DNA of 64,000 nt from Tetramitus jugosus (GCA_937625935.1 OW569348.1:62001-126000); one strand, 5' to 3'; positions 9,598 to 21,359 are shown, counted from the first letter of the stretch. Made by a program: numbers and translations. The notes: a model not told the origin generated them from the letters alone.

Positions 9598-12500
9598 ATG
9601 TCTCAACAAGAATTATTTGAGAGATATAAGCGAGACTTGCGTCAGGAGTCTTGTGATGATTTGATTGTGTTGAAAGAACCAACAGACACAAACATTACTG
9701 ATATTCTAAAGAACAGGTTCGACAATGACAACATCTATGTACGTTTCTTACAACTACGATGAGAACAAAAAACAGCTCATTGTTTTTTTGTGTGTGTGTA
9801 TGTGTTGAGAAAAACAGTTGACTGACTCGCAACAACAATAACAATTTTTTTTTTCGATGACACATGAATTATAACAAACAACAAACGAATCACATATGAT
9901 TGTGTAGACATACTTGGGCTCCACACTTGTCAGTGTGAATCCATACAAGAAGACGCATCACTATGGAGCTGATGTCGTCAACTTTTTTCACACGCATCAA
10001 CCATTCAGCGTAGCTCCTCACTTGTATTCTTTGGCTGAAGATGCGTTCCGTACCATGAAGGAAACCGGTATTGGTCAAACAATTATCATTAGTGGTGAGA
10101 GTGGTGCTGGTAAAACAGAGGCCGCTAGAATCATGATGGACTATTTGGCCAAGGTGTCTGTCAGTGGTTTGCTCACTGAGAACATTAAGAGAATTATTTT
10201 GGGAAGTAATGATGTGTTGGAAGCTTTTGGTAACGCAAAGACATTACGTAACGATAACTCTTCTCGTTTTGGTCGATTTGTTGACATGTATGTGTTTGTT
10301 TGTCTGTTTGTCTGTTTAGCTCTGTGAGGCTCTTGAGCTTTTTTGTATTGGATGGGGTGCAAAGCTTTTTGGTGTTGCTTTTTGCCGTTGACTTTTTTCT
10401 TTGGTGTGGTGATTGCATATGCTAACATTTGACTGTCTCTTCCTGAACCTGCCTGTAGGTTTTATAATTTCAAGGGACACATGGAGGGTGCTCACATTAC
10501 AACTTCTTTGCTCGAAAAGAGCAGAGTTGTTTCCCAGAGGGACGGCGAGCGAAACTTTCACATTTTTTATCAAATGTGCGAAGGTGCGGATGATTTGCTG
10601 AGGAAACAGTTGCACCTTGAACCAGCAAAGAACTTCAAGTATCTGTGCCCTAGAAAGGGTGCTGATATCAGCATCAAGGGAGCAACGGATAGAGACGGAT
10701 TCCGCATCACTCAAAACTCAATGACTGAAGCAGGTATCTCCATGAACGAACGTATTGAGATTTATCGTTTGTTGGCCGGTATTTTGCACTTGGGTAATTT
10801 GGAGTTCAAGGAGGAACTCAAGGAGAACAAGGAGTGTTCCGTGATTACGAACAGTGAAACTTCATTAAAGTATGCTGCTCAGTGCCTTCAAGTCGAAGCC
10901 GATACACTGAGAGATTGCATCTTGTACAGAACAGTGAAGATTGGTAAGGAAGTGATCAAGCAGACACAGCCTCCAGCAAAGGCCATTTTCAACAGAGATG
11001 CTCTCGCCAAGGGTATTTATGAACGTTTGTTCCAATGGTTGATCCGTAGAATCAACGCTGCGGTCAAGAGACCGGATGACGCGCGATTTACGATTGGTTT
11101 GTTGGATCTGTACGGATTTGAGATTTATAATAAGCCAGATATCAATTCGTTGGATCAATTGAATATTAATTATGTGAATGAAAAGCTTCAGGAACAGATT
11201 CAGAGATGGCTCATGAATGAACAACACGAGTATGTGAATGAAGATGTGCCATGGAAGATGAAGAACTTTGACATGTCGAGTGTTGAGGAGTGCTTGAGAG
11301 TCATTGAAGCGAAGCCACTTGGTCTCTATTCCCTGTTGGATGAAGAATCGTTGATGCCAAAGGGTACAGATGAGAATTACTTGAACAAGGTGAAGCAGGC
11401 ATTCCATGAAAAGTCTTCTGCATTTGAGTCATCCAGATTCAAGGGCAGTAACTTCAACATCAATCACTTTGCATGTAAAGTAACATATGATGTCACCGAT
11501 TGGGTCGAAAAGAATCGTGACACATTATTTGAGGACTTGATCTTGGGCATGAGATCCTCAAACAGTGAATTGTTGAAGCAACTGTTTCCAAAGGACGAGA
11601 GAATTGCACTCGGTGGTAGGATGCAAACAACAACTTCTCAACACTTCCAATCCGATGTGAGAGGATTGATTGGTAAGTTGGCCAACAAGAAGCACTTGTA
11701 TGTCAAGTGTGTCAAACCAAATCACAACAAGTCTAATCAATTTGATGAATCTGTTGTGATGGATCAGGTGAGATACCTTGGTGTCAGTGGAAACGTGTTT
11801 GTCAGAAAGGCTGGTTATCACTTCAAGATGCCTTATGAGGAATTCTTGGATCGATACAAGTTGTGCTGTGATGCCACATGGCCTACATGGAGAGGTACTT
11901 CAAAGGCTGGCTGTCAAGAGATTCTAAAGGAAATGAAGGTGCCAAAGCACATGTACGCACTTGGTAAGAATAAGATTTTCTTGAGATCGCCTATCCAGTT
12001 GGCTGCGTTGGACGAGAAGGTTGAGTCCAGAAAGGTCGAAATGGCTACACTTATCCAAAAGAATTATAGAAAGTACAAAACCAAGCAGACAACAATGGCA
12101 CAGCAGCACTTGGCTAAAGCGCTCGGTATTACCTTCAACGAGAAGGATTTCTTGTTCAAGGAGACTGTCAGTACCATTAATTTGCATGGTCAACGAGAGA
12201 AGCGTCTATTTGTTCTAACTAAGGACGCTGCTTATGTCTTGTGTCCAAGAACATTTGCCGTACTCAGAAGAATTCCATACAACAAGATGAATAAGTTGTG
12301 CTGCTCTGCACTGAACGACGGTGTGTTCAACATTGAAATTCCAAAGACTTACGATTGCTTAATTGAAGCAGACAACAAGCATCAGGTGATGAAAGCCATC
12401 AGAGAGGCCTATGAAGGAAGCATGAAGAAGCAGATGAAGGTTGAAATCTCAGAACAATTCAAGTTCAGACCAACTGCAACCAAGCTCAAGACCTTGAAGT

Positions 12501-14731
12501 TCGCCAAGAATGATGACATCAAGGTAGCAATGATCGAATCATCTCCAGATGGTCTCGTCATTTCTATCAAACCATCTGACGATGCATTCGATGGCAAGAA
12601 GCTGAGAAGAAAGAACTCCATCCATAAGAAATACTATGGTGATTACGTTCACTTGCAAAACTCTGATTGGTTCAAGCAGATGCAAGCAGATTACGGTGAT
12701 CAATATGTCAGCTTCAGTTCTGTTGTCAGCAAGTACAACAAGAACTATAGAAAGCAAGAGCGTTTGCTAGTTGTCACCGATCGTGCCATTTACAATCTCG
12801 ATCCTAATGGATACATCACAAAGAGAAGAATTGAGATGAGAAGAGTCAAGGGTCTCACTGTAAGTCCTTTGACCGATGGTTTCTTCATTCTGAGAATTCC
12901 AGACGAGTATGACTACCTGTTCGAGAGTTCCAAGAAGACTGAAATTCTTAAGGTATTGCAAGACAATTTTGCCAATGCCACAAGAAGTACATTGCCTTGC
13001 GACATTAAGGAAGAAATTATATACAAGGCTGACAAGAAGGCTGTCTCTGAACAGACCATCAAGTTCAGAAGCGAGAAGGGTATCACCCAGACATCCATCA
13101 TGAAGAAGCCTTATGGTGCTGATGTTCTTGTCAAGATGGAAGAAACAATTACAAACGACATGACAAGAGAAGTTGTTCAAGATATTTATCAAGGACAGAA
13201 GCTTCGTCGTCGTGAGTCTCTTCTTGCATCACAAGTTGGTGATTACTTGCACATTGGTAGCTCCAAGCACTTTACCAAATTGTGTCAAAAGCATGGTGAT
13301 ACTCAACTTGTCTACTCTGGAGGTGTCAGTAAGATCAACCACAGATATCAAGTGCAAGAAAGAAAGATCATTATCACGAATGATGCACTGTACAATATGG
13401 ATAAGGAAGCCAAGGAGGTGAAGAGAAGAATTCCTATTAAGAAGATTGCTGGTATCTCTGTCAGTACCATGAGAGATGGTTTCTTCATTGTCAGAGTTCC
13501 TGATGAGTACGATTACTTCTTCGAATCTCCAAACAAATCTGAGATTATTAAGGCTTTGCTCGATCAATACAAACTATTGAAGGGTACAAACTTGGATTTG
13601 CAAGTGGATGATAAGCAGTTCTACTCAGCATTTAAGGTTTCAAAGGGCAAGGGTGTTCGTACCATTGATTTCCAAGAGGATAACACTGTACTTCAATCAA
13701 CCTTGTATCCAACTGGAACTGGTCTAATGATTAAGGTGAACAACAAGGAAGAAACAGAGGAACGTTTGCAACAACAAGAATTCGATATTGTCACACAAGA
13801 TGCTGATATTTATCAGGGAAGAAAGATTAGAAGAAAGGAATCTGCAAGCAAGGAACGCTTGGGTAATTATGCCCTTGATATTGAACATGCTGATATTAAG
13901 AAGCTGTTCAGACAAAACGGTGATAAGCAACTGCTGTTTAGTGCTGAGATGAACAAGATTAATAAGAAGTTCACCTCACAAAAACGTATTGTGGTTGTCA
14001 CTGATAAGAACGTGTACAACTTGGATCCAAAGGACTTTAAGGTTAAGAGAAAGATTGCTTTGGATGAGATTGATGCTGTGTCTGTCAGTACTCTTCCTGA
14101 TGGTATGTTCTGTATGCACATGCCTGAATCATACGATTATGTATTCGAATCAGATAAGAAGACTGAGATGATTGATGTTTTGGCTACTGCTGTTCAAAAG
14201 AAGGCACAAAAGAGAATGACTGTCAATGTGGCCGATAAGTTCGAATTCTGTCCTACAAAGGGTGAATTCCAGTCTATTAACTTTGTGCTCGATGATTCTG
14301 CAGGTCAAACAACGATTGAAGGTGCTACAAACGGCTTGGTTGTTCACGTGCAACATGATGAACCAGCAGTTACACTGGAAGCTGCCTATGTCTACTACAA
14401 CGACAACCAACAGAATCCAATTGAAGTGAAACCAGAACCAATTCTCATCAAGTTCAAGAAGAGATGGAAGTACAAGCTAGAAATTCGTTTCTATGTTAAT
14501 GAACATTTGCAAGGATGTTCCTTCCATGAGAAGATTGACACCGTGACAAGCAGACAAGAGTTCGTTTCTCAAGTTGCTGATCTGAAGCCTCGTGATGAAC
14601 GTTACATTGTGACGCTACCAGAAAGAAGAGTCATCTTCTCCTTGTTGTCCAAGACTCAAGTCAAGGCAAAGTTGGTGGATCCAGTAGGAAAGACCCTCCT
14701 TGCCATTCGTTTCGTCTACGATGTCAGATAA
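9598..14731 (+). CDS. Class I-type myosin heavy chain (about 1597 aa): motor, 1 IQ, four TH1 repeats, C-terminal RhoGDI-like domain; exons 9598-9738, 9908-10287, 10459-14731
   Basis: GESGAGKT P-loop, LEAFGNAKTLRNDNSSRFG, DLYGFE, RDALAK, IQKNYR; repeated GxKxRR..S...GDY and SxxxDGFF...YDYxFES TH1 signatures; introns checked for frame. Confidence 0.95.
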
Positions 14732-14999
14732 ACAATAACGACAATAAAAACCAACATCTATCCCATTTTACAAACTTGGTCGGCGTCATTCGCGAATATT
14801 ATCCCGTAAGGTCCCTCTCTTGCTTTCCACATCCAGAAGACACGACACGTTCTCGCAGCGGACGTCCGCTGGACAAGAGGTGTTGCCAGCAATTTTGTGG
14901 AGAACAAACGACGTTCGATTCGTTTACACAGACAAACAACAACAACAATTAAACAAACAACAAACAAAAACCACCAACAAACCAAAACAACAAAACAAA

Positions 15000-19373: not shown

Positions 19374-21359
19374 ATGGGTATAATGAAGGATTGCTTGGGT
19401 GATGTTTTTGTTTTGTCATGTCTGTGTCCGAGTGAAGGCCACCATACACCACCACCATCCAATCCTGAGCTATTGACCACCTTTCCTGATATTCAAAATC
19501 AGCAAGGAGCGGACAAGGGTCAATGGTGGATACTGTCATCTCTCAAACAAGCTGCTTTACACGTTAGTGTTTTGGATGAGTCCCTGAGTGAGAGTAAACA
19601 AAGATTTGCTCAAGATTTAGAGACATTTTGGCTTGATATGAATGGTTCGAAGTCACAACTTGTGGAGCACTTGGACTCACTCATTATTACATATATGGAG
19701 GGTTATAAGACAAAGTTAAAGAAGGAGTATCACATACTGTGTCATTTGCCAATCATTCGTTCGAATGTTTCAAGTGAAATAGCTTCAAAGATCGTATCAA
19801 TGGAGGAGAACAGGGGATCGACACAATTTAGGTTATGTATTGATGATGTACTTTGCTCTGAAGTTGTTTTGAATGTGATTATTCGAGCCATGTACACAGG
19901 ACAAGTAAGATGTAACTATTTTGGTCACATACACTTTGATGTTTCTCAGTTGTCCGAGAATGATACAGTTTTCGATTCATTGTGCTTGTCAGAAGAGGGT
20001 AAAATCAAGCTCAATGCTTGGATTTGTGTTTTATTTGAGACATTTGCTGTTTATCACCATTTGAAGATGCGAAACCAAGTGATAGAATCATTCATCTTTC
20101 TTCAACTTGATGAATTGATTCGTCACGGATACTCCCAGGATATCATCACTCAAAACCAGATATTAGGTCAATCATTGTTTGGCACATTGATATCGGACAT
20201 ATCTATCACAAAAGGATTCAATTCTCTTCTCTCTGTAGATACTCCTGAGTGTAACTTATTCGACCAGAAAGAAAGTAATGGGGATCTTAAATTGAGTTTG
20301 GATGTAGATGACAATGAGGAATCATGTAACATGCATATTGTCTTGCACAAGGTGGTGCTAATGGCCCGTAGTGAGTATTTCAGGAACATGTTCTTGTCAC
20401 AGATGAGTGAATCGAGCATGTTGCAAGTCAAGCTTCCACTTTGCCAAAACTATTCTGTGCTGAAGTCGTATGTGTTTTACTTGTATCATGGATATATTCA
20501 CAGGAACGAGATTGGGGAGATCAGTGTTGAATTACTTGGTATTGCCAAGTTGATGGATGATCTTCATTTGATATCTCTCTGTGAAGAAGCGATTGCTTGC
20601 AGACTTGATTCAACCAACATCATTGACTTGTACAACATTGGAAAGAATATGTCACTCAGCGGGTTACTATTGAGATGTGAAAAGATGTTGGTGTACTTTC
20701 GAGAAACGGGAGAGATGAATGAAATACCCGAGTTTGACATGAATGACATCAGGGAAAGATATTATCTTTCGTATAGGTTTCAACAGACTGATTGTTTTTT
20801 GAAGGATACTGGCAGATCATCCTTGTATGTACGATGTGTGGTTGTTATTGACGACAACTATGACTTTTTGAAGGTGCTTCACTCATTCTTGGTCCGGAAT
20901 TGCATCGACGAGGACAAAGAGTATGTTTCTGGCAAATACTATACCATTCGATTCTTGGACTCGAGTGGACTCAAGTTTCTGGTTTCTGTAGCGTTTGATA
21001 CTGCACTCTCCGATGATACCGCTGCTATTCAGAACTTTCGTTGCTTCCAACCAGGTTATTTGCTTTTTGCTACCTCAGCTACTGGCGCCACAACAGAGAC
21101 AGTACAGCAAGCAATAGTATCGAGCCAAACGATCGTTCCTAGATATGTAGCTGGGATGTCCTCCTTCACATTGCTTGTGGGCGATCGGCATCGTGGTCAA
21201 TCTGATTGTCAAATACCTTCAAGTTTGGTCAATTATTGCGAGTTGGGCCCAATAGAAGAATCTGCTGAAGTAATAGATCGTATGTTCTTCTCAGCGATTC
21301 GAGTGGGGCTTTACAATTATATGCACTACAATATTCCTCTACAATACTGGAGGGAATGA
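19374..21359 (+). CDS. BTB/POZ (plus BACK-like) protein with a C-terminal degenerate Rho/Rac-like domain
   Basis: HKVVLMARSEYFRNMF...MSES BTB; YLYHG; LCEEAI...N.IDLY BACK-like helix; C-terminal RCVVV / FDTA / LLVGDR / MFFSAIRVGL; start codon uncertain. Confidence 0.75.
   Translation: MGIMKDCLGDVFVLSCLCPSEGHHTPPPSNPELLTTFPDIQNQQGADKGQWWILSSLKQAALHVSVLDESLSESKQRFAQDLETFWLDMNGSKSQLVEHLDSLIITYMEGYKTKLKKEYHILCHLPIIRSNVSSEIASKIVSMEENRGSTQFRLCIDDVLCSEVVLNVIIRAMYTGQVRCNYFGHIHFDVSQLSENDTVFDSLCLSEEGKIKLNAWICVLFETFAVYHHLKMRNQVIESFIFLQLDELIRHGYSQDIITQNQILGQSLFGTLISDISITKGFNSLLSVDTPECNLFDQKESNGDLKLSLDVDDNEESCNMHIVLHKVVLMARSEYFRNMFLSQMSESSMLQVKLPLCQNYSVLKSYVFYLYHGYIHRNEIGEISVELLGIAKLMDDLHLISLCEEAIACRLDSTNIIDLYNIGKNMSLSGLLLRCEKMLVYFRETGEMNEIPEFDMNDIRERYYLSYRFQQTDCFLKDTGRSSLYVRCVVVIDDNYDFLKVLHSFLVRNCIDEDKEYVSGKYYTIRFLDSSGLKFLVSVAFDTALSDDTAAIQNFRCFQPGYLLFATSATGATTETVQQAIVSSQTIVPRYVAGMSSFTLLVGDRHRGQSDCQIPSSLVNYCELGPIEESAEVIDRMFFSAIRVGLYNYMHYNIPLQYWRE

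What the first reader, a model, noticed from the sequence alone, without database searches (positions are those of the whole stretch)
12040..14731. Myosin I with four tandem TH1 domains capped by a RhoGDI-like domain
Seen: after a single IQ motif the tail has four TH1-type repeats (about 12130-12570, 12580-13140, 13180-13745, 13800-14350). Repeats 2-4 each begin (F/Y)xGxKxRR..S...G(D/N)Y and contain SxxxDG(F/M)F...YDYxFES. Known: class I myosins normally carry one TH1 (PH-like, binds anionic lipids), with or without GPA/SH3. Seen and inferred: the last ~120 aa (IKFKKRWKYKLEIRFYV...QGCSF...LKPRDERYIVTLPE...KAKLVDPVGKTLLAIRFVYDVR) align by eye with the RhoGDI Ig-like fold (LKEG..Y.LKI.F.V...GL.Y...P....Y....PE...KSKF.D......L.....I.K). 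Hypothesis: a high-avidity membrane motor that binds or carries prenylated Rho/Rac, coupling GTPase extraction to actin-based transport. Multi-TH1 myosins may already be known in Naegleria relatives; the GDI-like cap is the part most likely to be undescribed.
Basis: partly seen in the sequence, partly recalled or inferred. Interest (0 to 1): 0.8.

Follow-up and report, generated by a model that had tools for sequence, protein, structure and literature searches.

The report
Myosin-I tail ending in RhoGDI-like domain
An expressed amoeba class-I myosin has four lipid-binding TH1 domains and ends in a diverged copy of the lipid-anchor-binding half of RhoGDI; the same TH1-plus-GDI-like pair sits on two RhoGEFs in this genome, so it probably acts in Rho GTPase signalling.

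Summary
A three-exon gene (9598-14731, + strand, about 1597 aa) encodes a class-I myosin motor, one IQ-like motif and four Pfam Myosin_TH1 domains. Each TH1 scores 70-125 bits alone against a cut-off of 31.1. A 121-aa C-terminal domain has no Pfam hit.

That domain folds confidently (pLDDT 88.8) into the RhoGDI Ig-like sandwich:
- Foldseek: the top 31 hits are all RhoGDI, E about 1e-8.
- VIA-align: Z 13.2; the next fold scores 10.5.
- Family profile against 24 canonical RhoGDIs: hhalign 93.7%, E 1.9e-7, over the whole Ig domain.

It lacks the N-terminal switch-binding arm and RhoGDI's conserved APSGLLARGSY loop. It is therefore a RhoGDI-derived domain, not a GDI.

A spliced soil-metatranscriptome contig confirms both introns. 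Against that strain, 37 of 38 differences are synonymous.

The four-TH1 tail is ancient, because repeats cluster by position across genera. It is already published (Kollmar & Mühlhausen 2017). I found no description of the GDI-like cap.

New here: a TH1 plus GDI-like cassette recurs in this genome in two RhoGEF proteins and two motorless proteins. The scan had flagged such genes on other DNA. In metagenomes it occurs with RhoGEF, CH and RING domains.

Binding of prenylated Rho/Rac remains inferred; the complex prediction gave no answer.

The parts
9598..9738 (+). Exon 1: start codon and the first 47 codons of the motor domain
   Evidence: The ATG and a GTACGT donor were read. The RNA contig in run X2 joins 9738 to 9908, skipping 169 bases with GT..AG ends.
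9908..10287 (+). Exon 2: motor domain with the P-loop (GESGAGKT)
   Evidence: Pfam Myosin_head scores 158.7 bits on profile positions 33-158. The RNA contig covers 9908-10282, holds 5 more letters, then resumes at 10459. A GTATGT donor starts at 10288.
10459..14731 (+). Exon 3: rest of the motor, the IQ-like motif, four TH1 domains, the GDI-like domain and the stop codon (14729-14731)
   Evidence: The open frame is shown. The RNA contig covers 10459-14758. Of 38 differences to the soil strains, 37 are synonymous.
10484..11986 (+). Motor domain, the part in exon 3 (class I type)
   Evidence: Pfam Myosin_head scores 475.9 bits on frame aa 2-502. The seven best solved-structure matches are class I myosins: Dictyostelium myosin IE 357 bits, Myo1b 345, Myo1c 317. 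Myosin II follows at 309.
12044..12106 (+). Single IQ-like motif
   Evidence: The only match is weak: IQ_SCN5A_C, 14.4-16.9 bits, below its cut-off. An IQxxxRxxxxK pattern is visible in the translation.
12095..12571 (+). TH1 domain 1. It is the most diverged and follows the IQ motif directly, as in ordinary myosin I.
   Evidence: Pfam Myosin_TH1 scores 70.3 bits alone. Its position clade has 100/100 support.
12605..13138 (+). TH1 domain 2
   Evidence: Pfam Myosin_TH1 scores 118.6 bits alone. Its position clade has 100/99 support.
13205..13753 (+). TH1 domain 3
   Evidence: Pfam Myosin_TH1 scores 118.5 bits alone; PH_3 scores 20.5 bits. Its position clade has 99/94 support.
13829..14365 (+). 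TH1 domain 4
   Evidence: Pfam Myosin_TH1 scores 124.5 bits alone and covers profile positions 1-185 of 185.
14366..14728 (+). C-terminal RhoGDI-like Ig domain ('GDIL'), about 6 residues after TH1-4
   Evidence: AF2 gives pLDDT 88.8 and pTM 0.81. The Foldseek top 31 hits are all RhoGDI, E about 1e-8, TM 0.73-0.80. VIA-align gives Z 13.2, rmsd 2.6 over 122 aa. hhalign against 24 RhoGDIs gives 93.7%, E 1.9e-7. A family profile hits only RhoGDI chains in the PDB.

Best explanation
Shown:
- This is an expressed, selectively constrained class-I myosin of a heterolobosean amoeba. The nearest named relative in the searches is Acrasis kona.
- Its tail has four anciently duplicated TH1 (PH-like, lipid-binding) domains. 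It ends in a diverged homologue of the C-terminal, geranylgeranyl-binding Ig domain of RhoGDI.
- That domain has no N-terminal switch-binding arm, so it cannot be a nucleotide-dissociation inhibitor in the RhoGDI sense.
- TH1 followed by this GDI-like domain is a reusable cassette. In the same genome it also ends two RhoGEF proteins and two motorless proteins.

Inferred:
- The four TH1 domains hold the tail on acidic membranes with high avidity.
- The GDI-like sandwich, about 6 residues behind the last TH1, takes up the lipid anchor of a membrane-bound lipidated protein. The most likely client is the prenylated C-terminal tail of a Rho-family GTPase.
- It would then work like an arm-less lipid-anchor receptor (as PDE6-delta and UNC119 do). 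It would tie Rho/Rac to an actin motor, or to the exchange factor in the RhoGEF versions, rather than extract and silence it.
For: Architecture:
- Pfam finds the motor plus 4 TH1 domains.
- The motor's best solved matches are class I myosins.

Expression and selection:
- A spliced 4712-nt RNA contig from a soil metatranscriptome matches both introns exactly.
- Nine RNA runs hold the gene.
- 37 synonymous against 1 non-synonymous difference.

Antiquity:
- All 12 full-length homologues (Naegleria, Willaertia, Acrasis and unnamed) have 4 TH1 plus a terminal GDIL.
- Repeats cluster by position, not by species, with 99-100% support.

RhoGDI homology:
- AF2 model pLDDT 88.8.
- Foldseek top 31 hits are all RhoGDI, then PDE6D and UNC119.
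- VIA-align Z 13.2 against 10.5 for the next fold.
- ESM Atlas features score 0.93 to a Rho_GDI cluster. Atlas shape gives TM 0.80 to a cluster in which 55% of members carry Rho_GDI.
- The family profile hits only RhoGDI in the PDB: E 6.6e-7, and 1.2e-3 without the bridging sequences.
- hhalign gives 93.7%, E 1.9e-7 over 126 columns. The match starts exactly where RhoGDI's arm ends.
- Family member P0028 also gives a weak Pfam Rho_GDI hit.

Link to Rho signalling:
- Two uninterrupted ORFs in this genome read RhoGEF, 2 TH1, GDIL.
- Metagenome contigs carry LRR-RhoGEF, then TH1, then GDIL as adjacent same-strand pieces.
- The genome has at least 16 Rho-type genes, several ending in a polybasic stretch and a CAAX box.
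Against: - No binding was shown. The predicted complex of the domain with a Rac-like GTPase of this genome gave no answer (this is not evidence either way).
- The canonical RhoGDI loop APSGLLARGSY, nearly invariant in 24 RhoGDIs, is not conserved in GDIL.
- GDIL is more basic (pI 9.2-9.9, net +5 to +10) than the Ig part of this organism's own RhoGDI (pI 8.05). That sits poorly with gripping polybasic Rho tails.
- The residues aligned to human E109, D140, E163 and E164 (listed in PMC8622166) are K, Q, R and R by the HMMER register. This organism's own RhoGDI also lacks two of those four, so the argument is weak.
- The organism keeps a normal RhoGDI, so the GDI job is already covered.
- Other fusion partners (CH, RING, RGS) are not Rho-specific.
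- The two-domain model has pTM 0.56, so a fixed TH1-GDIL geometry is not supported.
Confidence: 0.45

Rival explanations
1. The GDI-like domain has kept only the Ig-like sandwich of its RhoGDI ancestor and no longer binds a lipid anchor. It would act as a basic membrane-contact or protein-protein interaction domain that extends the TH1 membrane platform. The myosin would then be an unusually avid membrane-actin linker with no Rho cargo.
For: - The domain is basic in all 12 homologues (pI 9.2-9.9), like TH1 domains 1-3 (pI 9.35-9.57; TH1-4 is about neutral, pI 7.09).
- The RhoGDI loop invariants are lost.
- Pfam Rho_GDI does not detect it.
- Many Ig-like sandwiches with no lipid role score Z 9-10 against the model.
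- It follows a TH1 domain in most members whose full architecture could be read.
Against: - RhoGDI stands well above all other sandwiches in two aligners. The next best Foldseek group (PDE6D, UNC119, NPC2) are all lipid-pocket proteins.
- The very high conservation of the domain (mean column identity 77%) fits a specific ligand.
- The RhoGEF fusions point to a Rho-related role.
Confidence: 0.3
2. The domain is a lipid-pocket module for a ligand other than a Rho prenyl tail. Candidates are the acyl or prenyl anchor of another G protein (as UNC119 does for myristoylated G-alpha, or PDE6-delta for farnesylated Ras-type proteins) or a membrane lipid. The myosin would carry or sense that ligand.
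For: - Foldseek also matches PDE6D, UNC119 and NPC2 at E about 4e-5 to 7e-5.
- One family member carries an RGS domain, a G-alpha regulator (P0025).
- Residues of RhoGDI near the prenyl-Cys are not conserved.
- Like PDE6-delta and UNC119, the domain has no switch-binding arm.
Against: - By sequence profile the family is related to RhoGDI and to no other PDB family. 24 of 24 and 21 of 22 hits are RhoGDI.
- The fusion partner seen most often apart from the myosin motor is RhoGEF: three independent cases.
Confidence: 0.2
3. The resemblance to RhoGDI is a modelling or chance artefact, and the C-terminal stretch is just an extension of the last TH1 domain.
For: - There is no Pfam hit.
- A profile of the 12 myosins alone finds nothing in the PDB by sequence.
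- The alignment behind the structure prediction was shallow: 12 sequences.
Against: - Pfam TH1 is complete (profile positions 1-185 of 185) before the domain starts.
- Three kinds of test agree: fold, language-model features and profile-profile sequence comparison.
- The domain also occurs without any detectable TH1 (P0025 and P0017).
Confidence: 0.03

Closest known systems
Heterolobosean class-1 myosins with tandemly duplicated TH1 domains (Kollmar & Mühlhausen 2017, PMC5583752, Additional file 1 and Fig. S5; e.g. Naegleria gruberi D2V147)
   Same: It is the same protein family. P0007 (N. gruberi 'myosin', D2V147) is a full-length homologue with 4 TH1 and the same C-terminal domain at 68% identity.
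   Different: Nothing differs in architecture. What is added here is the identity of the previously unassigned C-terminal region. The word RhoGDI does not occur in that paper or in its held supplements.
RhoGDI (Pfam Rho_GDI, PF02115), C-terminal geranylgeranyl-binding Ig domain
   Same: - The fold matches: Foldseek E about 1e-8, TM 0.73-0.80; VIA-align Z 13.2.
- Profile homology covers the whole Ig domain.
- Shared sequence landmarks include the Tyr aligned to human Y110 and the P-R-x-E-x-Y...P stretch.
   Different: - There is no N-terminal arm that binds switch I/II.
- It is not detected by the Pfam model.
- The APSGLLARGSY loop is not conserved.
- It is more basic.
- It is embedded at the end of large multidomain proteins instead of standing alone at about 200 aa.
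- The organism has a separate normal RhoGDI.
PDE6-delta (PrBP/delta) and UNC119
   Same: These are arm-less beta-sandwich lipid-anchor receptors of the same fold group. They are the next Foldseek group (E about 4e-5) and also score in VIA-align (Z 9.0-9.2). Functionally they are the best analogy for an arm-less GDI-like domain.
   Different: No sequence-level relationship was detected. They are free-standing soluble shuttles released by Arl2/3 (established knowledge), not parts of a motor.
Ordinary short-tailed myosin I (e.g. Myo1c, tail structure 4R8G)
   Same: The motor is class I type. It has an IQ motif followed by TH1. The TH1 profile hits only the Myo1c tail in the PDB (E 1.3e-10).
   Different: It has four TH1 domains instead of one, plus the extra GDI-like domain. 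No GPA/SH3 region is present.
Class IX myosins (RhoGAP in the tail; from established knowledge, not tested here)
   Same: Both are actin motors that carry a domain of the Rho regulatory system in the tail.
   Different: Myosin IX carries a catalytic GAP domain. Here the domain is a non-catalytic, RhoGDI-derived sandwich. The motor classes and lineages also differ.

Membership tests
Class I myosin | Myosin motor domain most similar to class I motors | tested here: met
   Pfam Myosin_head scores 476 and 159 bits on exons 3 and 2. The top seven solved-structure matches are myosin IE, Ib and Ic (357-312 bits), above myosin II at 309. No full class phylogeny was run. PMC5583752 places heterolobosean homologues in class 1.
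Class I myosin | Tail with IQ motif(s) followed by a TH1 domain | tested here: met
   An IQ-like motif is present (weak). TH1-1 begins directly after it. Four TH1 domains score above the gathering cut-off.
RhoGDI (PF02115) | Match to the family's curated sequence model above its cut-off (26.5 bits) | tested here: not met
   There is no Rho_GDI hit at E<=10 on the C-terminal 129-162 aa. PF02115 searched over the whole genome finds only the canonical gene on contig 29.
RhoGDI (PF02115) | C-terminal Ig-like beta-sandwich of the RhoGDI type | tested here: met
   AF2 model pLDDT 88.8. Foldseek top 31 hits are all RhoGDI. VIA-align Z 13.2, rmsd 2.6 over 122 aa. hhalign 93.7% against 24 RhoGDIs.
RhoGDI (PF02115) | N-terminal regulatory arm (helix-turn-helix) that binds switch I/II and inhibits GDP release (PMC8622166; bioRxiv 10.1101/2023.05.10.540210) | tested here: not met
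   The profile alignment starts at residue ~56 of the organism's own RhoGDI, just after the arm. In the myosin the preceding residues are the complete TH1-4 domain (profile positions 1-185 of 185), with a linker of about 6 residues.
RhoGDI (PF02115) | Hydrophobic cavity that takes up the geranylgeranyl group | not testable with these tools
   Model coordinates cannot be read, and no prenyl ligand is offered for complex prediction. The nearby conserved loop APSGLLARGSY of canonical RhoGDIs is not kept.
RhoGDI (PF02115) | Binding of a Rho-family GTPase | tested here: inconclusive
   The complex prediction with a Rac-like protein of the genome gave no answer. The only indirect support is the fusion of the cassette to RhoGEF domains.
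PDE6-delta / UNC119 lipid-binding sandwiches | Sequence or fold membership | tested here: not met
   Fold similarity is weaker than to RhoGDI (Foldseek E about 4e-5, TM about 0.6; VIA-align Z 9.0-9.2). The family profiles give no sequence match. They are an analogy for the mode of action only.

The most novel reading that the evidence does not exclude
TH1 plus the GDI-like domain would be a previously unrecognised membrane-proximal receptor module for prenylated Rho GTPases. It arose from RhoGDI by loss of the inhibitory arm. Heterolobosea then bolted it onto an actin motor, onto RhoGEFs and onto other scaffolds. Rho/Rac proteins would be held by their lipid tail while being transported (on the myosin) or activated (on the GEF). 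This would be a way of organising Rho signalling with no known counterpart in animals, fungi or Dictyostelium.
Probability: 0.3. Interest if true: 0.75.

Novelty: new variant of a known kind. Interest (0 to 1): 0.55.

Why it matters
Class I myosins link membranes to actin. How they choose cargo beyond acidic lipids is poorly known outside animals and yeasts.

Here a motor family conserved across Heterolobosea, including Naegleria, carries a domain descended from the lipid-anchor-binding half of RhoGDI. The same cassette sits on RhoGEFs. This gives a concrete, testable link between Rho GTPase lipid tails, an actin motor and exchange factors in a lineage far from the usual models.

It also assigns a fold and an ancestry to a conserved, previously unlabelled region. 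It defines a small new domain family: only 22 representatives among 1.84 billion clusters.

The multi-TH1 tail itself is not new.

Tried and rejected
- **Pfam on the C-terminal domain.** No hit at E<=10.
- **PDB sequence search with the 12 myosins only.** Nothing found. It became informative only after distant family members were added.
- **BLAST-level or single-sequence comparison with the organism's own RhoGDI.** Not significant: hhalign E 0.08, then 0.003.
- **Complex prediction** of the domain with a Rac-like GTPase of the genome (L013). Verdict 'no answer', score 0.00. This is evidence neither for nor against binding.
- **Rigid TH1-GDIL supradomain.** The two-domain model has good local confidence (pLDDT 84) but pTM 0.56, so a fixed geometry is not supported.
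- **'GDIL is always preceded by TH1'.** Rejected. No TH1 was detected in P0025 (RGS plus GDIL) or P0017, nor by Pfam in the C22 paralogue.
- **Acidic 'pincer' residues as a test** (PMC8622166). They align to K/Q/R/R here. The organism's own canonical RhoGDI also lacks two of the four, so I downgraded the argument.
- **Taxon of the metagenome contig carrying RhoGEF/TH1/GDIL.** A search with its SYF1 neighbour did not resolve it.
- **PF26659**, listed among precomputed hits for the three closest homologues. It is not in the local Pfam copy. It is absent from the other nine homologues, which share the domain, so it is unlikely to describe it.
- **Literature searches** for tandem TH1 or RhoGDI in myosins. 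Apart from the supplement sentence in PMC5583752, nothing turned up. Only the open-access library was searched.
- **Joined three-exon protein.** Exons were handled separately by reference.


Full report
**Gene and observation**

The finding lies in one long open frame, 10481-14731 on the + strand (1416 aa). Two upstream exons belong to the same gene:
- 9598-9738 holds the start codon and is followed by a GTACGT donor.
- 9908-10287 holds the P-loop and is followed by a GTATGT donor.
- Exon 3 starts at 10459.

The product is about 1597 aa. A public protein of 1596 aa (P0001) is 100% identical over the tail.

Pfam finds Myosin_head on exon 2 (159 bits) and exon 3 (476 bits). It also finds four Myosin_TH1 stretches. 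Scanned as separate pieces they score 70.3, 118.6, 118.5 and 124.5 bits against a cut-off of 31.1. The four repeats are 23-36% identical to each other. The IQ motif is only IQ-like by score. The last 121-131 aa have no Pfam match at E<=10.

**Is the gene real and used?**

Nine RNA runs from soil metatranscriptomes hold most of the stretch. In one of them a 4712-nt contig lies on 9709-9738, 9908-10282 (plus 5 letters) and 10459-14758. Both predicted introns are therefore removed exactly. The first is reported as a GT..AG joint skipping 169 bases. An oligo-dT library has a 3.7-kb contig over 11024-14735. These contigs come from slightly different strains. Of the 38 listed differences in exon 3, 37 are synonymous, which shows strong purifying selection.

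**What kind of myosin?**

The best solved-structure matches of the motor are class I: Dictyostelium myosin IE 357 bits, Myo1b 345, Myo1c 317. These stand ahead of myosin II at 309. A profile of the TH1 repeats hits only the Myo1c tail (4R8G, E 1.3e-10).

A word search with the C-terminal region found 12 full-length homologues. The named ones are all Heterolobosea: Acrasis kona at 75% identity, Willaertia magna, Naegleria gruberi D2V147 and N. lovaniensis. In all 12 the C-terminal domain is terminal, and all 12 have four TH1 domains.

A maximum-likelihood tree was built from 32 TH1 repeats of eight proteins. P0001, P0002, P0006, P0010 and P0011 were left out as near-duplicates or for size.
- Repeats 1, 2 and 3 each form one clade, with 99-100% support.
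- Repeat 4 is unresolved at the base of the repeat 2-4 group, but a single origin is not ruled out.
- In total 3 label changes are needed, which is the minimum possible; the shuffled mean is 18.3.

The four-TH1 tail therefore predates the split of these genera. [quoted passage not shown]

**The C-terminal domain: fold**

The 12 sequences are highly conserved (mean column identity 77%). AlphaFold2 on this alignment gives a confident all-beta model (pLDDT 88.8, pTM 0.81).
- Foldseek against the PDB lists RhoGDI1/2 chains as the top 31 hits (E 1.2e-8 to 5e-7, TM 0.70-0.80, 16-18% identity). PDE6D, UNC119 and NPC2 follow at about 4e-5 to 7e-5.
- An aligner that does not depend on Foldseek puts RhoGDI2 and RhoGDI1 first at Z 13.2 (rmsd 2.6 over 122 residues). 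The next fold, the Wzt carbohydrate-binding domain, scores 10.5.
- The ESM Atlas points the same way by language-model features (0.93 to a Rho_GDI cluster). By shape the best match is TM 0.80 to a cluster in which 55% of members carry Rho_GDI.

**The C-terminal domain: sequence homology**

An exhaustive profile search of 1.84 billion cluster representatives found only 22 proteins at E<=1e-3. Some are distant. One of them, P0028, also gives a weak Pfam Rho_GDI hit (20.6 bits).
- A profile of 19 family members finds 24 PDB sequences at E<=10. All are RhoGDI, the best at 6.6e-7.
- Without the three most distant members, 21 of 22 hits are still RhoGDI, the best at 1.2e-3, in the same register.
- A profile-profile comparison with 24 canonical RhoGDIs from many eukaryotic groups gives 93.7% probability and E 1.9e-7 over 126 columns.
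- With the 12 myosin sequences alone it gives 76% and E 2.2e-5.

The aligned region begins at about residue 56 of this organism's own RhoGDI. That is exactly after the N-terminal arm, and it covers the whole Ig domain.

**How it differs from a GDI**

- The arm that binds the switch regions and blocks GDP release (PMC8622166; bioRxiv 10.1101/2023.05.10.540210) is absent. The complete TH1-4 domain sits directly in front, about 6 residues away.
- The loop APSGLLARGSY, nearly invariant in canonical RhoGDIs, is not kept.
- The domain is basic in all homologues (pI 9.2-9.9). The Ig part of the organism's own RhoGDI has pI 8.05.
- The genome has a normal RhoGDI gene (193 bits, contig 29).

I therefore call the domain RhoGDI-derived ('GDIL') and not a GDI.

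**A recurring cassette**

A profile search of the window's own 26.35-Mb genome found three more GDIL loci.
- Two are single open frames with one TH1 directly before GDIL (715 aa on C12, 520 aa on C6).
- One (467 aa on C22) has no Pfam-detectable TH1.

The scan's notes mentioned a RhoGEF with tandem TH1 and a GDI-like end elsewhere in this genome, so I checked this. RhoGEF and TH1 matches share one open frame on C16 and another on C34.
- C16, 1302 aa: SH3, RhoGEF (140.7 bits), two TH1 (143.6 bits).
- C34, 1275 aa: RhoGEF (135.6 bits), two TH1 (149.3 bits).
- Their C-terminal 148 and 183 aa match the GDIL profile at 84.6% (E 6.8e-6) and 93.7% (E 1.9e-7).

The apparently free-standing metagenomic GDIL proteins are probably last exons.
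- On one set of contigs the preceding same-strand calls are LRR plus RhoGEF (84 bits), then TH1 (72 bits). A GTAAGA..AG intron joins the first two frames without a stop. Joining TH1 to GDIL would need a 25-nt GT..AG intron that I read only by eye, so a single gene is not established.
- On another contig the preceding call is CH plus TH1.
- Others are RING plus TH1 plus GDIL (P0026), 3 TH1 plus GDIL from Willaertia (P0029), and RGS plus GDIL without a detectable TH1 (P0025).

**Mechanism**

Shown: the identity, expression, conservation and ancestry of the parts, and the reuse of the cassette on RhoGEFs.

Inferred:
- The four TH1 domains give multivalent binding to acidic membranes. Three of them keep both basic residues at the position of the PH-like signature. 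This is read from the alignment together with my own knowledge of Myo1c.
- GDIL takes up a lipid anchor, most likely the prenylated tail of a Rho-family GTPase.
- The genome has at least 16 Rho-type genes. Several end in a polybasic stretch and a CAAX box.
- Without the arm, the domain should behave like PDE6-delta or UNC119: a receptor for the lipid tail, not an inhibitor of the G domain.

I give the full reading 0.45. Its identity part I put at about 0.9.

The main rivals are:
- a sandwich that has lost lipid binding and serves as a basic membrane or protein contact (0.3);
- a pocket for a different lipid or lipidated protein (0.2).

**Limits**

- The single complex prediction gave no answer.
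- A fixed TH1-GDIL geometry is not supported (pTM 0.56).
- The literature check covers only the open-access library. Domain databases such as InterPro or Gene3D could not be consulted, so an automatic E-set or RhoGDI-superfamily label on D2V147 may already exist.

**Verdict**

The multi-TH1 part is known. The GDI-like cap appears undescribed, as does the TH1-GDIL cassette with its RhoGEF fusions. The scan had flagged the RhoGEF and motorless versions on other DNA of this genome. Together they make a new variant of a known kind, of moderate interest.

Noticed in passing
L019 (G000:C29:355972-358992) and L001 (G000:C29:358152-361712): A Rho-type GTPase domain heads a long open frame whose tail looks BTB-like by eye, so it resembles RhoBTB. 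It lies about 2 kb from the genome's only canonical RhoGDI gene, on the opposite strand.
   Followed up: no
L017, L018, L020 and L016 (G000 contigs C23, C27, C30): This is a multi-copy family. Long open frames (over 660 aa where complete) end in a Rho-type GTPase domain with a CAAX-like CIVC or CVVC end. An N-terminal region before it looks like Kelch-type repeats and an F-box by eye. No Pfam scan was run.
   Followed up: no
whole genome G000: Rho signalling is large for a 26.35-Mb genome. There are 40 RhoGEF matches and at least 16 loci encoding the Rho switch-I motif PTVFDNY, against 0 for the reversed control pattern. There is only one RhoGDI.
   Followed up: partly
L021 4063-6462 and L022 (JGI metagenome contigs): An AT-rich protist contig carries LRR-RhoGEF, TH1 and GDIL pieces. 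Its introns seem very short: possible GTAAGA..AG introns of 29-71 nt, and a 25-nt one needed at the second junction. A search with its SYF1 neighbour did not resolve its taxon.
   Followed up: partly
window 9875-9892 and 14238-14261: In all four runs laid, two short stretches of the gene region also lie on an unrelated, abundant contig of about 2.8 kb, with loose ends on either side. This is probably a short shared or low-complexity word. It was not examined.
   Followed up: no
window 9590: The soil-strain transcript has a CACA insertion in the CA-rich 5' leader, just before the start codon. It is a microsatellite-type length difference.
   Followed up: no
L007 3717-6473 (-), G000:C6: A 918-aa open frame with only a weak IQ hit lies 160 bases upstream of the 520-aa TH1-GDIL frame, on the same strand. 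It could be an upstream exon of the same gene.
   Followed up: no
window 19374-21359: A 661-aa open frame lies about 5 kb downstream of the myosin. Another note of the scan describes it as a BTB protein with a dead Rho-like end. It was too diverged to use as a Rho query. No link to the myosin was tested.
   Followed up: no
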